From: Haliotis rubra
Taxonomy: Eukaryota
Direction of reading: 5' to 3'
Length of the DNA stretch: 64,000 nt
Assembly: GCF_003918875.1 (NCBI RefSeq)
Contig: NW_025767302.1
Span: 1,860,001-1,924,000, forward strand
Shown: piece by piece, positions 6,653 through 64,000 of the stretch
Numbering within the stretch: the first letter of the stretch is position 1
How the letters are laid out: each line of letters opens with the position of its first letter
Program-made: the position numbers and the translations under genes
Notes under the pieces: model-generated
The model's database searches: none
What the model saw: only the letters and a program-made list of their open reading frames with translations
Told to the model about the DNA's origin: nothing

Positions 6653-6816
6653 NNNNNNNNNNNNNNNNNNNNNNNNNNNNNNNNNNNNNNNNNNNNNNNN
6701 NNNNNNNNNNNNNNNNNNNNNNNNNNNNNNNNNNNNNNNNNNNNNNNNNNNNNNNNNNNNNNNNNNNNNNNNNNNNNNNNNNNNNNNNNNNNNNNNNNNN
6801 NNNNNNNNNNNNNNNN
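6653..6816. other. Assembly gap (164 N)
   Basis: Run of N followed by a 67-bp tandem unit (6817-6920), suggesting a collapsed repeat. Confidence 0.99.
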
Positions 6817-51905: not shown

Positions 51906-52345
51906 GCTTTTCGCCGCACGAAGAAGTACTGACAACAAGCCATGTTCTTTAAAATGCATGAAGAATTATAATTCACAATTGTCGACTGTCTCACAAAAAG
52001 AGTTTAATCTTTGTTAAAATACGTTCAGAGTCATATTTAGCGGTTACTTCATCCAACAGGGAAGCATACTAGTCATAATTGATGACTATCATCCGGGTCT
52101 TCCACTTGCATATGGTGTAGGTCGCCAGCTACGTGAAGATCCCACAACAGCCATCTGGAGGAATACCCGCATGGATGAATGTCACCAAGGTGTGTTCACT
52201 TGACTGAATGTCACCAAGGTTTGTTCACTTGGTGTACAGTGGGCCCAGAGACGAAGCAGACGGAGGTGCAACTGTAGGTGGGTCAGTCTACAGTGTGTCA
52301 GAATAGTGTCAGAGTAGTGACCCAGGCAGGTGGGAAGGTCGCCAG

Positions 52346-52562
52346 GGTCCCCATCCATAAAGCGATCGTAGCGCTACAACAGTCGTAAGTCTATGTTAAA
52401 ACATGGGAGTTATGATCATCTTAGCGCTACGAACGCTTTGTGGACCGGGACCCAGGACCTAGATTTTCGAAGCTCTCTTAGCGCTAAGATAGTCGTAAGT
52501 TAATGTTAATGTATGGCACTTACGACTATCTTAGCGCTAAGAGAGCTTCGAAAATCTAGGCC
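52346..52562. mobile_element. Two tandem 107-bp hairpin mini-MITEs separated and flanked by CAG
   Basis: CAG[52346-52452]CAG[52456-52562]CAG. Each element is palindromic, the second near-perfectly. Confidence 0.7.
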
Positions 52563-54474
52563 CAGCTCTGTAGCTGGAGAGTGCACAATTTATCCATTAT
52601 TACCCCTTCCTTCCTTGCTCAGGATGCAGTACCTTGTATGTTCTCTTACATAAATGAGGAAAACCATCATACCAACTTTTCTTATGTTTATTATTTTTAT
52701 TTGATATATTTCTGCAGCGTACAGTGAAGAAATGCGTATAAAAGTGAACGCATAAAAGTGAACATATTGTTAAACTATACACGCTATTGTGTCACAGGAT
52801 TGTCTGTCCACACTCACTTTAACAGGATTGTCTAGCCGAGACTCACTTTTTCTAGATTGTCTTGGACGGAAGGGTAGCCTAGTGGTTAAAGCGTCCGCTC
52901 GTCACTCCAAAGGTCCGGGTTCGGTTCGAAGCCCATTTCTGGTGTCTGTGATATTGCAGAAAAATTGCTAAAAGCGGCGTTAAATCATACTCACTCACTC
53001 TAGATTGTCTGCCCTGACCCGGTTAGTGATGTTCAGCCCTCGAATGGCAGGTAGACTACTGGATGCGACATAGGACAACTAAAACTTCAGTGAGAGAGAC
53101 AGGTCCTACCGGAAGTGCAGGTCGTGTTAACCCTATCTGTGAACAGTAGTGTCATCACTGATTTTTAGTATTCATTCAGACAATTTTGCCTTTTATGACA
53201 AATGGAATTTGTTGTTTCGGTATTCGTTGACATTTTGAATTTACGTTGAAAAGCAAAACCTAATATCCATGTCAGTCATTATTTATAATTGTACGGAAAT
53301 CTATGCCCAAATTTCCACAGGCCAGACAAATATGAAAGACAAATATCTATTGAAAACACTCAGAGTGACACTCTGCATTTCACACTATATAATTACCACA
53401 AACAAAGACAGAGTACCTTAACGATGAGCTAATGGTATTTTTATAAAGCATACTTTGCGGAATTTTTGTAAATATTAGAAAAAGGTAAATGATGTGGCAA
53501 CGTATACAACCAAGTTAATCAAGAGAATTCGCTGGGTCTATTAATAGAAACAAAATATCGCACAAATGACGTCACGCAATACTTAACATCAGTATCACCA
53601 GTTTCTGAACGAGGTTGGAGTATGGAGATTAGATGAATAAACGCCCTACTTTCACAGCATCTTGCAAGGCGTAGCTACCATTATATACAAAAGCCGGGCT
53701 TACACACGATTGTTGCTAAAAAGGTTGGGCAAGCCCTCAATACTATCTAAATGTAAAGATTTCCAACATGTCGGGCTTACACGAAAAACATGGCTTGCTA
53801 CTGTACTTGTTCTGTTGCTGGCTGCATCCGAAAACTGTACAATCATGGTTACTGTACTTCAACTGCATGGGGTTATCAGAGTCGAATATAACAGCGATCG
53901 AATGCTTCAAATACATGGTGCATAAATAACATGCACATGTTATAAATAGGAGTTTTGACAGTGCTGTGAGTGAGTTTAGTTTTACGCCGCACTCAGCAAT
54001 ATTCCAGCTATATGGCGGCGGTCTATAAATAATTGAATCTAGACCAGACAATCCAGTGATCAACATCATGAGCATCGTTCCACGCAATTGGGATACGAAG
54101 TGTGTCAACGAAGTTAGCGCGCCTAACCACCCGATCCCCTTAGTCACCTCTTACGACAAGCATGGGTAACTGAAGATCAATTCTAACCCGTATCTTCAGG
54201 GGTCACGTTTATTAAAAAAGTGATGGTATTAGGTTAGTTGTCGTCAACATGCTGTGGTGTTCTTTTGGTTTACTTCCGTAGAGAAACACGTATTTAGTCC
54301 CTGTACTTGTCTATTCTTATAAAAATCATTTAAGAATATGTCAAAACAATACAAATGAATATTTTTTCGACTTCGTGGGCAATTAATCACGACCAATCTA
54401 TTTTTTGGCCATATATATGTGAATAACCAAACAGACTTTTTTAAATGTTGCAGGTTTTGTCCGCCAGGCAATGC

Positions 54475-55431
54475 ATGTATCCACTGAAGAACTTCATGGA
54501 ATATGATCGGACAAATAAACGGAGTTCGAATACACCCAAACACCCAAAGTACAAAACATACAGCTCCCGAGTTGAGTCATTTGTTGCCTGGCCTATACGG
54601 TATGTCCCGAAAACACCCGAGCAGCTGGCATCAGCCGGGTTCTTTTACATCGGGTCAGCTGACCGGGTCACGTGTTTCCAGTGCGGGATAACTCTGAGAG
54701 ACTGGGAGGAAGAACATGACCCTGTGGCAGAGCATCAGAGATACTCGGAACACTGTCAGTTCATCAACAAAGTCACTGTAGATCAGCTTGGGGTTGTCAA
54801 AAGAAGAAACGGTTCTCTCGTAAATACATCCGCGTCTTGCACTAAGGCCGTGGGAGATGCCATGGTCACCTCTGAAACAGATAGAGAGGAGATTAACCAA
54901 GTATCAGTCTCAACACCGAAACCAGATGGTGGAGAAATCCAAGAAGCCAACAATGACCTTCACCTTGGTGGAGGAGCATGCGCACCTCCGCAGGGCATGG
55001 ATGTTCCAAGCGAGGCTCGTGAGGACGATCAAAATGCAAGACCGTTCTCCTCTCTTTGTGAGCGATTAGGGGCTCTAACAGTACAGCAATGTAAAGATGG
55101 CGGTCTCTCAGAAGGTGATCCTGTTCCAGCAACCATTTCTAGTGCAAGAAAACAGGAGGCTCAAGGCTCAAAGGTTCCCACCACATCTCAAGACGGGAAA
55201 GAAGAACCAACGGTTGCTAAGTCTCCAAAGAATAACCTGATATCCATAAAAGCTGAAAACAGGCGTTTGAAGGAGCAGTCTACTTGCAGAAAGTGCAGAA
55301 TAAAGGCCGTGTCAACCCTCTTCCTGCCCTGTGGTCATCTCGTCACGTGCTCCGACTGCGCAGAAGAAGTTGACGCATGCGTGGTGTGTGGTACCACTAT
55401 TCTCGGGACAGTAAAAACATTTCTAATTTGA
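54475..55431 (+). CDS. Inhibitor of apoptosis protein (single BIR + C-terminal RING), single coding exon
   Basis: BIR: RVESFVAWP...LASAGFFYIGSADRVTCFQCGITLRDWEEEHDPVAEHQRYSEHC. IAP-type RING: CRKC...LFLPCGHLVTCSDC...CVVC...VKTFLI*. The ORF opens at 54445, but ttgcag at 54448-54453 looks like a splice acceptor, so the start is more likely the ATG at 54475 (or 54496). Confidence 0.92.
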   Translation: MYPLKNFMEYDRTNKRSSNTPKHPKYKTYSSRVESFVAWPIRYVPKTPEQLASAGFFYIGSADRVTCFQCGITLRDWEEEHDPVAEHQRYSEHCQFINKVTVDQLGVVKRRNGSLVNTSASCTKAVGDAMVTSETDREEINQVSVSTPKPDGGEIQEANNDLHLGGGACAPPQGMDVPSEAREDDQNARPFSSLCERLGALTVQQCKDGGLSEGDPVPATISSARKQEAQGSKVPTTSQDGKEEPTVAKSPKNNLISIKAENRRLKEQSTCRKCRIKAVSTLFLPCGHLVTCSDCAEEVDACVVCGTTILGTVKTFLI

Positions 55432-58455: not shown

Positions 58456-58461
58456 TTTATT
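58456..58461 (-). terminator. Candidate AATAAA polyadenylation signal of the GH86-like gene
   Basis: tttatt on the + strand, about 50 nt downstream of the TGA stop at 58513-58515. Confidence 0.5.
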
Positions 58462-58512: not shown

Positions 58513-61210
58513 TCATTGGCCTTTCCTCAGTGTTAGAGCAATTGCAGCGACCTGGCCTTGGTCCTGAGCAAAGCGCATCTGGACAGCATTGGCGTTTTGC
58601 TTGAGGATGGTCGGTGGAACATGATATTCTATCGTTGCCCAGAGATTGTCGGTGTCGTTGTTGCTCGGGTTGTGGAGAATGTAGTACGAGTGGAGATTTA
58701 CTCCATTCACAGTCACTGAAACTGGAATATACTTGGCAGAATGATCAGCGAAACTTACTGAAATGCGAAGTTTCGCTGCCGCAATGTGATGAAGATCACT
58801 GCTGTGGAGCATGATGTTCATGTGAGCTGCTTTCCTGTTTATTATAACCAACATGTCGTCTCCATAATGCACACTTTCGTAGACCAAGGGAACATGAGAA
58901 AATGTGTGACCTGTGGGGAACTGTAGGAAGCATGAGGATTCTGGAGGGACAGTCACCTGATTTCCATTGACATGAATAGGTACTTGCTTATCCAGTTGAG
59001 TGGCCCTCCTGTTATTGAGGTACAGACAGGTTGATGTCCCGTGGGTCAACTTTACCCATCCTTTGTCAAAAGCCAGTGTGACCTTAGCTTGAGCTGTGTC
59101 ATAGTTGTGTAGCAGAACGGTCAGCATTTTGGAACTTGGTTCCACAAGGACATGACTCTGTATCTGCCTCTCTGCCTGGTGGAACTGACTCTCGGATCTG
59201 AGGAACTTCATACTGCTGGTGATGTTGTCCCACAGGTGGAAGGCCAGAGCTATGTCTCTCTCGTTTTTATTCTTGTCCAGGATACTGTAGTTGATGCTTG
59301 CTTGGCCTTTCCTGTCGGTGTAACTGAGAAGGAAGGACACAGCCCTGTCCACCACATATCGAAGCTCAAGAAAGGTGAATATATTCGAGTTGTGAAGGTT
59401 GATGTAGGCCCAGTCCAAGAGGGTCGATGGTTTCTGGACATCGATGCCTGTGACCGTTGCTAGACCATGAGCTGAGAATATGATTGGAATATCCTTCCCA
59501 GTCATCATATGAGCATATGTTTCCACAATGTCCACCGTCCCAACCAGCCTAGCCTCATTTGGGCCATAAAAGTGATATCTGTTCCCCTGGACGACGAAGT
59601 GATTGAAAGGATGGAATGAAAAGAAGTCCAATAGGCCAAGGGACATGTTCATGAATTGTGTTATCCGGCTCCATTGACTAAAGTTCTGTTTATCCATATA
59701 GGTTATTCCAGCAGTAAGGGCAGGCCCGCCTATCTTTATTTGGGGATATATGGCTTTCACCTTCTTGGCCACAAGCTCGAATGCAGTAACGACAGTTGTC
59801 CAATTGACATCCAACTTCCACAGTGTGTTTGGCTCATTGATTGGTTCAAAATATGGAGGGACTGCGCCGTTAGAACCGTTGTATATTGCCTGGACGTGCA
59901 GAGATATGGTTTCCGCTACAGCATCAAGATTATTTGGAAAATGGCCCTTATGTGCAGATTTGTCCATCCAGTGAGGCCATAAAGTTCCTATATAAGAAAT
60001 ATGATGCATATGTAAAGAAATTCATTTGCTGAGATACTGATGAATCTTGATGAAAGTTATCCCGTGCATTTTTTTAATCTTCCTGAACACTAAACATCTG
60101 TAGGATCAGTGCTATAAAGTTTGCATTTTGACTGCCATCACATTGTAACATCTTTAGATTTTCAACAGAAATCCTCTTCTCTGTCAAAACTAATTATTTA
60201 ATGATCTCATGTCTGTTAAGGTGATTCGTGAACTTTACGACATGGACAGAATTGTAAAATCTTATATCGGTTGGAAAGGTTTTGTCTCTACTATTTGCAT
60301 CATATTGGCAAAAAGCAAAGCTGTGCCCCTTGGTAGTATATGAGTGGATCTCATGATTTACACTCAATTTTGGTAAACAGATAAATACCAGTGATTGATT
60401 GAGTGAGTGAGTCAGTGAGTATGCTTTTGCGCCACTTTTAGCAACATTCCAGCAATATCACAGTCGGGGACAGCAGAAATGGGCTTTACATATTGTACCG
60501 AATTGGGAAATCAAACCCAGGTCTTCAGCGTTATGAGTTGACGCTTTAACCACTAGGCTACCCCACCGCCCTGTTGAATACCAGTTGTGGAAGCCAAGTA
60601 CATCAAACCCATTGGTAAAAACAAGGAGACATGCGAGCTCTCTTCACCTACCGCTAAGTTCCAGCATAATTGGTCTCTGTTTTCCATATGTATTCAAATT
60701 GTAGATATATTTCTCAACTAAATTGTGTTGAAACTGCTTGTTTTGGAAGAATGCGGGATCCGGGTACCCCTTTCGGTTTGGATCCTCCGTCACCTATGAG
60801 AAACGTCAACTTTAACACAGTTTAAAGCCAAAACCTCTGGGAAACGATATCTATATAACAAAACATTAAATTCAGTGCTTGAGTAGGTTCATTGATAGAA
60901 ATATTCACGCTCAAGTTTTGCATTTAGAAAATATATATTTTCCAGGTGAAACACTCACTTCTAGGATATAGTCGAACACACATACCTTGTCAAAATAGTT
61001 TAAGTCTGAAGTTATCCATCTTCCAGTGCGGGCTCCGGTTTTCTTCACGTTGTCTAAAGTGTAGTGATTGTCCAGGCCCATTTTACCATTCCACCTGTCG
61101 GGGTCGAAGTTGGTTTTTCCTCCTTGTACGAGGTACTCTGGGTAAATGGTCACTGTATACCCCCTGACACAAGGAAAGGTACAGAGAGCGAGCACAATGG
61201 GTAGCAACAT
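58513..61210 (-). CDS. Secreted GH86 beta-porphyranase/agarase-like protein (clan GH-A barrel + beta-sandwich tail), 613 aa, 3 exons
   Basis: Exons 60986-61210 (signal peptide MLLPIVLALCTFPCVRG), 60652-60793 (VTEDPNRKGYPDP) and 58513-59987. Introns are GT-AG with phases 0 and 1; total 1842 nt. Motifs VPPYFEPINEP, KIGGPA, LDFFSFHPFN, VDIVETYAHMMTGKDIPIIFSAHG and the C-terminal AKLRISV...VTVNG...IEYHVP...NAVQMRFAQDQGQVAAIAL line up, from memory, with Bacteroides plebeius BpGH86A. Confidence 0.8.
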
Positions 61211-63365: not shown

Positions 63366-63669
63366 GTCAGTGTAATTAGTGTCCTGTGTGACACTGTGCC
63401 ACTCTGTCAGTATAATTAGTGTCCTGTGTGACACTGCCACTGTGTCAGTATAATTAGTGTCCTGTGAGACACTGCCACTGTGTCAGTATAATTAGTGTCC
63501 TGTGAGACACTACCACTGTGTCAGTATAATTAGTGTCCTGTGTGACACTACCACTGTGTCAGTATAATTAGTGTCCTGTGTGACACTGCCACTGTGTCAG
63601 TATAATTAGTGTCCTGTGTGACACTGCCACTGTGTCAGTATAATTAGTGTCCTGTGACACTGCCACTGT
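63366..63669. repeat. 38-bp minisatellite (~8 copies)
   Basis: Unit gtcagtataattagtgtcctgtgtgacactgccactgt. Confidence 0.95.
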
Positions 63670-64000
63670 TGCTGCGGCACCATCAGAACATAGTGGGCTG
63701 CCATTTCGCCGACCGGGCGACATTAAAGAACCATGACGCTTTTTCTTCGTATATGGTATGCCATGGGCGCTGCGCCATATCATGGTGTACTCGTGGGCGC
63801 AGCAATCATCAAAATGATGGTATTAACAATGCGGCATGTCCGGGTGGTATTACCATGGAGCGCTTTTCATCTTCGCGGTGGTATTATTCGAACGCAGGGG
63901 CGTATATTGGGCATAGCGAACGATAAGGTATGGGCCGTATACGGAACTTACGCTGTAATGAACATAATTGAACTTTCGAACGCTGGTGGCGATGAGCAAG

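What the first reader, a model, noticed from the sequence alone, without database searches (positions are those of the whole stretch)
58513..61210. Intron-containing, secreted GH86 beta-porphyranase/agarase-like gene in an animal genome
Seen: an intact 613-aa, 3-exon gene with a signal peptide, GT-AG introns (one holding a host family A SINE at 60416-60571) and a downstream AATAAA, so it is not bacterial contamination. Knowledge: GH86 porphyranases/agarases such as Bacteroides plebeius BpGH86A are marine or gut bacterial enzymes acting on red-algal galactans. From memory, the motifs PYFEPINEP, LDFFSFH, VDIVETY and the beta-sandwich tail follow BpGH86A collinearly. Inference: a host-encoded protein acting on red-algal polysaccharide in a seaweed-grazing mollusc, possibly from an old bacterium-to-animal transfer that later gained introns.
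Basis: partly seen in the sequence, partly recalled or inferred. Interest (0 to 1): 0.82.

Follow-up and report, generated by a model that had tools for sequence, protein, structure and literature searches.

The report
Abalone GH86-like gene lacking its nucleophile
The blacklip abalone genome carries a real, intron-containing gene for a secreted protein built like bacterial red-seaweed agarases, but this copy has lost the residue that does the cutting, so it more likely binds the sugar than digests it.

Summary
A 3-exon, 613-aa gene lies on the minus strand at 58513-61210, with GT-AG introns, a high-copy SINE in intron 2 and an AATAAA 52 nt past the stop. It is identical to Haliotis rubra LOC124255411.

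The GH86 assignment holds by sequence (BuGH86 6e-11; family profile 1e-43, against GH39 2e-5). It also holds by fold (AlphaFold pLDDT 87; Foldseek TM 0.73-0.81 to all three solved GH86 enzymes; next family TM about 0.45).

The enzymatic reading does not hold for this copy. The position of the BuGH86 nucleophile E322 is Ala (codon GCT, 59470-59472). That column is Glu in 133 of 133 non-mollusc relatives and in 25 of 30 mollusc relatives. The near-invariant Tyr of the F-H-x-Y motif is Phe.

The five Ala-bearing proteins form one clade within Haliotis. They have intact tandem copies, and exon 3 of the H. rubra and H. rufescens copies gives dN/dS of about 0.22. This is a conserved pseudo-enzyme, most likely a galactan binder.

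The family is old in molluscs. Abalone, mussel and chiton share the same two intron positions. Molluscs are monophyletic among mostly bacterial relatives, but two protist-transcriptome sequences sit next to them, so the transfer route is open.

No RNA data and no paper on animal GH86 were found. The scan had already followed up other GH86 arrays in this genome.

The parts
60986..61210 (-). Exon 1 (75 codons): ATG at 61210, putative signal peptide, first beta-strands
   Evidence: tblastn of P0001 gives 100% identity. The donor is AAG|GTATGT.
60794..60985 (-). Intron 1 (192 nt, GT..AG, phase 0)
   Evidence: The same alignment column carries an intron in Haliotis paralogues, Mytilus californianus and the chiton Liolophura sinensis.
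60652..60793 (-). Exon 2 (142 nt)
59988..60651 (-). Intron 2 (664 nt, GT..AG, phase 1), which holds the SINE
   Evidence: The position is shared across three mollusc classes.
60416..60571 (-). High-copy tRNA-derived SINE inside intron 2
   Evidence: The core occurs 12 times in the window against 0 expected. Word depth is in the millions in genomic runs. There is a weak tRNA match at 60503-60560 on the minus strand.
58513..59987 (-). Exon 3 (491 codons plus stop): most of the (beta/alpha)8 barrel and both beta-sandwich domains
   Evidence: Pfam BPA_C at 4.8e-9, above its cut-off. PDB GH86 hits.
59833..59835 (-). Codon of Glu174, the retained acid/base of the N-E-P motif
   Evidence: PINEPN. The column is Glu in 163 of 163 aligned relatives.
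59470..59472 (-). Codon GCT = Ala295 at the position of the catalytic nucleophile (BuGH86 E322)
   Evidence: The column is Glu in 133 of 133 non-mollusc and 25 of 30 mollusc relatives. E322 is the nucleophile and E322Q is inactive.
59605..59607 (-). Codon of Phe250, replacing the near-invariant Tyr of the F-H-x-Y motif
   Evidence: SFHPFN. The column is Tyr in 99% of the other relatives. BuGH86 has IHLY there.
58456..58461 (-). AATAAA polyadenylation signal, 52 nt downstream of the stop

Best explanation
This is a genuine nuclear gene of the blacklip abalone, Haliotis rubra LOC124255411. It is one of a tandem pair and encodes a secreted protein with the full GH86 architecture: a (beta/alpha)8 barrel plus two beta-sandwich domains.

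It belongs to a mollusc-wide, intron-bearing GH86-like gene family. Most members of that family keep both catalytic glutamates and are probably real endo-beta-galactanases. This gene sits in a Haliotis-specific subclade that has lost the catalytic nucleophile (Glu to Ala) and the Tyr that is near-invariant beside it (Tyr to Phe). The subclade keeps the acid/base Glu and most other conserved barrel residues.

The subclade has kept open reading frames, has duplicated, and evolves under purifying selection. The protein is therefore used, but most likely not as a retaining glycosidase. The best-supported mechanism is that it binds red-algal galactan chains, or a related glycan, in the former active-site cleft without cutting them.

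Shown: the gene model, the family and fold, the residue losses, the single origin of the loss, the selective constraint and the shared introns. Inferred: secretion, the ligand, binding without hydrolysis and the physiological role.
For: Gene model and identity to the RefSeq model.

GH86 by sequence: BuGH86 6.2e-11 and Aga86A_Wa 3.5e-10 with the single protein. The family profile gives 9e-43, 1e-40 and 1e-28 to BuGH86, Aga86A_Wa and BpGH86A, against 2e-5 for GH39.

GH86 by fold: model pLDDT 87.3 and pTM 0.87. Foldseek E 3e-40 to 3e-35 and TM 0.73-0.81 to the three GH86 structures; the next family is at 6e-21 with TM 0.43.

Nucleophile loss: Ala aligns with the E/Q322 position that distinguishes 5ta1 from 5ta0. 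E322 is the nucleophile and E322Q is inactive. The column is Glu in 133 of 133 non-mollusc and 25 of 30 mollusc proteins, and Ala only in P0001-P0004 and P0008.

Further fixed changes at otherwise invariant positions: Y250F, N44M, T212A, V171P, plus H192F in the rubra/rufescens branch.

Single origin: the Ala clade is monophyletic at 100/99.

Constraint: exon-3 dN/dS is 0.21-0.23 between the two tandem H. rubra copies and the H. rufescens copies, and all four are intact.

Retained residues: E170, N173, E174, W228, D243, H248, D275, W375.
Against: No expression data could be obtained. No run on record as RNA holds the locus, and the runs that were laid are genomic.

No binding or activity data exist.

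dN/dS is about twice that of the one E-type orthologue pair measured (0.23 against 0.10). This fits relaxation as well as a new function.

The two Ala subclades are very divergent from each other (45% identity, dS saturated), so their function may not be uniform.

The positions of residues 250, 44 and 212 relative to the cleft are inferred from conservation, not measured.
Confidence: 0.55

Rival explanations
1. It is still an active glycosidase that works without the canonical nucleophile. Possible routes are a switch to an inverting, water-mediated mechanism, another carboxylate, or participation of a substrate group such as an acetamido or sulfate/carboxylate neighbour.
For: The acid/base Glu174 and most barrel residues are retained. 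Purifying selection acts on the gene. Several other formerly invariant residues changed together (N44M, T212A, V171P), which could be a re-tooled rather than a dead site.
Against: The only acidic residue newly fixed in the clade is D288. It lies seven residues before position 295, at the start of the predicted strand 291-302, so by inference at the far end of the barrel from the catalytic face. The Tyr to Phe change makes the nucleophile pocket more hydrophobic, not more suited to holding a water (inference). In BuGH86 even E322Q is inactive.
Confidence: 0.15
2. It is a functionless, slowly decaying duplicate of an active abalone GH86 gene, an annotated but dead gene.
For: The key catalytic residue is lost. 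dN/dS is higher than in an E-type pair. One related H. rubra model (P0003) is truncated or frame-shifted at its C-terminus, and a third H. rufescens copy is fragmentary. No RNA evidence was found.
Against: Intact 613-622-aa frames carry the same Ala in six genes I read at the DNA level: two in H. rubra, two in H. rufescens and two in H. asinina (P0004, P0008). The divergence between subclades is saturated at synonymous sites. dN/dS of 0.21-0.23, far below 1, holds over dS of about 0.44. Splice sites are conserved.
Confidence: 0.07
3. On origin: the mollusc family descends from one ancient transfer of a bacterial GH86 gene into a stem mollusc. It then gained two introns and duplicated heavily in abalone.
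For: 677 clusters at 50% identity match the profile. The named non-mollusc ones are bacterial: Rubellicoccus (annotated 'Beta-agarase') and a metagenome 'agarase'. The nearest Atlas clusters are Planctomycetota and Bacteroidota. Among named animal hits only Haliotis, Mytilus and a chiton appear. Molluscs are monophyletic at 100/100 on a long stem. Intron positions are shared across three classes. Coding GC (0.43-0.48) sits in host-like flanks.
Against: Two EukProt transcriptome proteins, one from the foraminifer Bolivina argentea and one unnamed, group with molluscs at 98/93, though on long branches. The tree is unrooted. Most rows are unlabelled metagenomic proteins. Absence from other animals rests on database content and on the 150 hits that were listed. 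A scan of 185,579 prokaryotic genomes with mollusc-derived motifs confirmed no relative, which reflects the motifs used rather than absence.
Confidence: 0.6

Closest known systems
BuGH86 (Bacteroides uniformis NP1 endo-beta-agarase; PDB 5TA0, 5TA1, 5TA5)
   Same: It shares the whole-length fold (TM 0.79-0.81). The alignment is collinear from about residue 74 to the C-terminus. The N-E-P acid/base motif, the DFF-x-H motif and the C-terminal BPA_C sandwich are present.
   Different: Identity is only 18-19%. The nucleophile E322 corresponds to Ala295, and the Tyr of I-H-L-Y corresponds to Phe250. The gene is animal, with introns and a eukaryotic signal peptide, and there is no polysaccharide-utilisation locus around it.
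BpGH86A (Bacteroides plebeius beta-porphyranase; PDB 4AW7) and Aga86A_Wa (PDB 8H97)
   Same: They share the three-domain architecture. Foldseek gives E 3e-35 and 6e-39. The profile gives E 1e-28 and 1e-40.
   Different: The same catalytic deficit applies. Substrate-specificity residues of the -2 subsite could not be mapped reliably at this identity.
E-type mollusc GH86-like paralogues (for example H. rufescens 'beta-porphyranase A-like' P0005, H. rubra P0020, Mytilus P0015, chiton P0017)
   Same: They share the 3-exon structure and intron positions and a signal-peptide-like N-terminus. Identity is 35-47% over the full length.
   Different: They keep S-E-[YF]-G and F-H-x-Y. None has been characterised biochemically in any paper I could find.
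Catalytically dead glycosidase-derived binding proteins of animals: GH18 chitinase-like lectins and the GH16-derived beta-1,3-glucan recognition proteins of arthropods (from my own knowledge, not tested here)
   Same: The evolutionary pattern is the same. A secreted glycosidase paralogue loses a catalytic carboxylate, keeps the fold and stays under selection.
   Different: The fold family is different (GH86, clan GH-A). The presumed ligand is different. Binding is not demonstrated here.

Membership tests
Glycoside hydrolase family 86 (sequence/fold family) | Significant sequence similarity to characterised GH86 enzymes, stronger than to any other GH family | tested here: met
   Single protein: 6.2e-11 to BuGH86 and 3.5e-10 to Aga86A_Wa, against 2.3e-4 for the best GH39. 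Family profile: 9e-43, 1e-40 and 1e-28, against 2e-5. Pfam BPA_C scores 36.6 bits against a cut-off of 26.2. Porphyrn_cat_1 scores 16.3 bits, below its cut-off of 27.
Glycoside hydrolase family 86 (sequence/fold family) | (beta/alpha)8 barrel followed by two beta-sandwich (Ig-like) domains | tested here: met
   The AlphaFold model has pLDDT 87. Foldseek gives TM 0.73-0.81 over about 650 columns to 5TA0, 5TA5, 8H97 and 4AW7; the next family has TM 0.43-0.51. The architecture is as described in PMC5849685.
Glycoside hydrolase family 86 (active retaining enzyme) | Acid/base Glu in the N-E-P motif | tested here: met
   PINEPN at 59827-59844. The column is Glu in 163 of 163 rows.
Glycoside hydrolase family 86 (active retaining enzyme) | Catalytic nucleophile Glu (BuGH86 E322) | tested here: not met
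   Ala295, codon GCT. It aligns with the E/Q322 position of 5ta1/5ta0. The column is Glu in 133 of 133 non-mollusc and 25 of 30 mollusc rows.
Glycoside hydrolase family 86 (active retaining enzyme) | Endo-hydrolysis of beta-1,4 galactosidic bonds in agarose or porphyran | not testable with these tools
   This needs recombinant protein and substrate assays.
   Pfam GH39 scores 13 bits, below its cut-off of 26. GH39 structures score 2e-5 against 1e-43 for GH86. GH30, GH79, GH51 and GH39 folds score E 1e-21 to 1e-15 with TM 0.42-0.51.
Horizontally acquired gene resident in an animal genome | Physically integrated in the host genome: spliceosomal introns, host repeats, host neighbour genes | tested here: met
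   Two GT-AG introns. A SINE in intron 2. A 2.9-Mb scaffold with an IAP (BIR+RING) gene next door. Independent genomic contigs cover the introns.
Horizontally acquired gene resident in an animal genome | Phylogeny nests the animal clade among donor-domain sequences, and the gene is absent from other animals | tested here: inconclusive
   Molluscs are monophyletic at 100/100 among mostly bacterial or metagenomic rows. Two protist-transcriptome rows are their sister at 98/93. The tree is unrooted and most rows are unlabelled.
Pseudo-enzyme (conserved, catalytically dead paralogue) | Loss of an essential catalytic residue together with purifying selection and intact orthologues | tested here: met
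   Searches show the loss. dN/dS is 0.21-0.23 with intact copies in H. rubra and H. rufescens. Ala-bearing full-length proteins also occur in H. asinina.
Pseudo-enzyme (conserved, catalytically dead paralogue) | Retained ligand binding without turnover | not testable with these tools
   This is inferred only from the retained residues E170, N173, E174, W228, H248, D275 and W375.

The most novel reading that the evidence does not exclude
Abalone turned a horizontally acquired bacterial-type agarase/porphyranase into a secreted, non-hydrolytic red-algal galactan receptor, a GH86-derived lectin. It has been maintained as tandem genes since before the Haliotis species sampled here diverged. It could serve in food recognition, in handling sticky galactans in the gut, or in sensing red-algal surfaces such as the coralline algae on which abalone larvae settle.
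Probability: 0.35. Interest if true: 0.75.

Novelty: new variant of a known kind. Interest (0 to 1): 0.6.

Why it matters
In the structures and papers I could reach, GH86 enzymes have been solved and characterised only from bacteria. Digestion of red-seaweed agar and porphyran in grazers is usually credited to gut microbes.

A mollusc-wide, intron-bearing GH86 family would mean that some grazers carry their own toolkit. The introns are shared by chiton, mussel and abalone.

This particular gene adds a second layer. A subclade has given up catalysis but is still conserved, which is a natural experiment in turning a glycosidase into a binding protein.

It also warns against reading automatic names such as 'beta-porphyranase A-like' as an enzyme activity.

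For aquaculture of abalone, knowing which paralogues really cut seaweed galactans and which only bind them is of practical use.

Tried and rejected
Bacterial contamination is rejected. The gene has introns, a SINE, a host scaffold and host-like composition.

GH39 or another clan-A family is rejected.

A sequencing error at the nucleophile is rejected. GCT needs two changes to reach a Glu codon. The same Ala is found in the tandem copy, in both H. rufescens copies and in two H. asinina proteins.

On laying, these proved to be genomic, because their contigs cover the introns. Expression stays untested.

Scan of prokaryotic genomes with the family alignment: the derived patterns were mollusc-specific motifs, and none of the 66 pattern matches was confirmed. 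This is uninformative about donors.

Identity of the EukProt orphan P0036: a word-based search found only itself, a Mytilus protein (9.5e-26) and two weak metagenomic hits. Its organism stays unknown.

P0046 (Bolivina argentea) has no genomic contig on record, so prey or contaminant origin cannot be excluded.

Literature: six searches for GH86, porphyranase or agarase together with abalone, mollusc or eukaryote terms, and for the RefSeq names, found no paper on an animal GH86. One search was badly posed and uninformative. The metazoan HGT compendium text does not mention it.

Mapping of the BuGH86 subsite residues (Q138, T82, M396) onto the abalone protein was abandoned, because the alignment there is unreliable at 19% identity.

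Full report
**Observation**

- Exon 1 is 61210-60986 and exon 2 is 60793-60652.
- Exon 3 is 59987-58513, stop codon included.
- Both introns are GT..AG, the frame closes across them, and the product is 613 aa.
- An AATAAA lies 52 nt downstream of the stop.

The protein is letter-for-letter NCBI's model 'uncharacterized protein LOC124255411 [Haliotis rubra]' (P0001). It lies on a 2.9-Mb scaffold of assembly GCA_003918875.1.

The element in intron 2 is a genuine high-copy SINE.
- Its core occurs 12 times in the window against none expected.
- It piles up to millions of word-depth in genomic runs.
- It gives a sub-threshold tRNA match.

Exon GC (0.43-0.48) sits in flanks of 0.32-0.41, and nothing looks foreign.

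**Family**

Pfam finds the GH86-specific C-terminal sandwich BPA_C above its cut-off, and Porphyrn_cat_1 and GH39 only below theirs.

Against all PDB sequences the exon-3 protein hits BuGH86 (6e-11) and the GH86 agarase Aga86A_Wa (3.5e-10). The best GH39 is at 2e-4.

A profile of 27 mollusc relatives widens the gap. It gives 9e-43, 1e-40 and 1e-28 for BuGH86, Aga86A_Wa and BpGH86A, against 2e-5 for GH39.

An AlphaFold model built on that alignment has pLDDT 87 and pTM 0.87. Foldseek places the three solved GH86 enzymes first, with E 3e-40 to 3e-35 and TM 0.73-0.81 over the whole length. The next family (GH30) is at 6e-21 with TM 0.43.

This is GH86 by sequence and by fold.

**The catalytic site**

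PDB entries 5TA1 and 5TA0 differ by the E322Q mutation. In the HMMER alignment that position (ISEYS / ISQYS) falls on Ala in the abalone IIFSAHG. The paper on BuGH86 calls E322 the nucleophile and E322Q catalytically inactive (PMC5849685).

The codon is GCT at 59470-59472, two substitutions away from any Glu codon.

I aligned 30 mollusc proteins with 133 full-length representatives from an exhaustive profile search.
- The acid/base Glu of N-E-P is present in 163 of 163.
- The nucleophile column is Glu in 133 of 133 non-mollusc and 25 of 30 mollusc proteins.
- It is Ala only in five proteins: P0001, P0002, P0003 (H. rubra and H. rufescens) and P0004, P0008 (H. asinina).

The same five also carry Phe where 99% of all others have the Tyr of the F-H-x-Y motif. 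BuGH86 has IHLY there. In clan GH-A enzymes this Tyr is known to hydrogen-bond the nucleophile; that point is my own knowledge and was not tested here.

They also carry fixed changes at three positions invariant in the other molluscs: N44M, T212A and V171P. The rubra/rufescens branch additionally has H192F.

E170, N173, E174, W228, D243, H248, D275 and W375 are kept.

The only acidic residue newly fixed in the clade is D288. It lies seven residues before position 295, at the start of the predicted strand 291-302. By inference this is the wrong end of the barrel for catalysis.

**Is it a dead gene?**

The locus is a tandem pair. A second 613-aa copy, 94.5% identical in exon 3, lies just beyond the window's end (L001:1076-5986).

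H. rufescens has two intact copies and a fragment at the corresponding place.

All four intact copies carry the Ala. Nei-Gojobori dN/dS over exon 3 is 0.21-0.23 at dS of about 0.44 between species, and 0.11-0.21 between tandem copies.

One E-type pair from the same two species gives 0.10. So constraint is real, but perhaps half as strong.

On the trees the five Ala proteins form one clade, at 99 in FastTree and 100/99 in IQ-TREE with a mixture model. The clade is sister to an E-type Haliotis group, so one loss is enough.

The two Ala subclades are only 45% identical and are saturated at synonymous sites. The loss is therefore old within Haliotis.

This pattern fits a conserved pseudo-enzyme better than a decaying duplicate.

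**Mechanism**

I commit to the reading that the protein is secreted and binds a galactan-type ligand in the former cleft without hydrolysing it (about 55%). The N-terminus looks like a signal peptide, but this was judged by eye only.

An alternative catalytic mechanism is possible but has nothing positive in its favour (about 15%). A functionless gene is unlikely (about 7%).

Nothing here tests binding, ligand or tissue. The only sequencing runs offered were genomic, since their contigs cover the introns. No RNA holder is on record.

**Age and origin**

Tblastn of each protein on its own locus shows the same three-exon structure. The introns fall at the same alignment columns (about 103-105 and about 153) in:
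- both Haliotis clades;
- Mytilus californianus;
- the chiton Liolophura sinensis.

The gene, introns included, therefore predates the split of those classes.

The exhaustive search of 1.84 billion representatives found 677 clusters at E <= 1e-3. The eleven best are mollusc or mollusc-like. There is then a gap, followed by an orphan from EukProt (P0036) and long lists of bacterial or metagenomic GH86 proteins.

Named examples are Rubellicoccus 'Beta-agarase' and an IMG 'agarase'. The nearest Atlas clusters are Planctomycetota and Bacteroidota.

In the careful tree molluscs are monophyletic (100/100). Their sister, at 98/93, is the pair P0036 plus a transcript assigned to the foraminifer Bolivina argentea. 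Both sit on long branches with deviant composition.

A transfer from bacteria into an early mollusc remains the simplest account (about 60%). However:
- the tree is unrooted;
- most rows carry no taxon;
- the protist sequences leave room for a eukaryote-to-eukaryote step, for independent uptake from an unsampled bacterial lineage, or for contamination of those transcriptomes.

**What is known**

NCBI's pipeline names many paralogues 'beta-porphyranase A-like', 'beta-agarase-like' or 'funoran endo-beta-hydrolase-like'.

I found no paper in the searchable library that mentions a GH86 gene of an animal.

Within this scan, two other pieces of the same genome with GH86-like tandem arrays were already followed up (notes s1-335031 and s1-320397).

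The presence of the family in abalone is therefore not new to the scan. What this report adds:
- the test of the nucleophile loss against 163 relatives;
- its single origin;
- the accompanying Tyr to Phe change;
- the selective constraint;
- the shared introns across three classes;
- the protist neighbours in the tree.

**Verdict**

This is a real host gene and a member of the GH86 sequence and fold family, but not a credible porphyranase or agarase. It is best described as a conserved, nucleophile-less GH86 pseudo-enzyme of abalone. I rate it a new variant of a known kind, with interest 0.6.

Noticed in passing
beyond the window end; L001:1076-5986 (about 65225-70135 in window coordinates): A tandem twin of the gene lies here: 613 aa, 94.5% identical in exon 3, with the same Ala at the nucleophile. 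Its introns are longer, so the gene spans 4.9 kb against 2.7 kb.
   Followed up: partly
window about 52175-55431 (+), = L001:15780-19036: The neighbouring called gene encodes a 330-aa product with BIR and RING (zf-C3HC4_3) domains, an IAP-type protein.
   Followed up: no
window 63366-63669 and 63670-64000: A 38-nt minisatellite (8 copies, 96% matches) ends abruptly at 63669. It is followed by non-repetitive sequence of higher GC (0.49) that runs off the window. It lies between the two GH86-like genes.
   Followed up: no
L002:3-2756 (H. rufescens): A third, fragmentary copy lies upstream of the two intact H. rufescens genes. Residues about 126-275 are missing and there is a frame change near residue 495. 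It is a probable pseudogene in the same array.
   Followed up: no
P0003 (H. rubra LOC124290996, another scaffold): This is a further Ala-type paralogue whose annotated product is 514 aa. It loses register with the family after about residue 440. It is either a damaged copy or a mis-modelled gene.
   Followed up: no
P0036 and P0046 (EukProt): These are two GH86-like proteins from protist transcriptomes, one from the foraminifer Bolivina argentea and one unnamed. Both keep both catalytic Glu residues and match the mollusc profile further towards the N-terminus (from positions 10 and 35) than most bacterial relatives (about position 77). They group with molluscs in the tree.
   Followed up: partly
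window 6653-6816: This is a run of N (assembly gap or masked).
   Followed up: no
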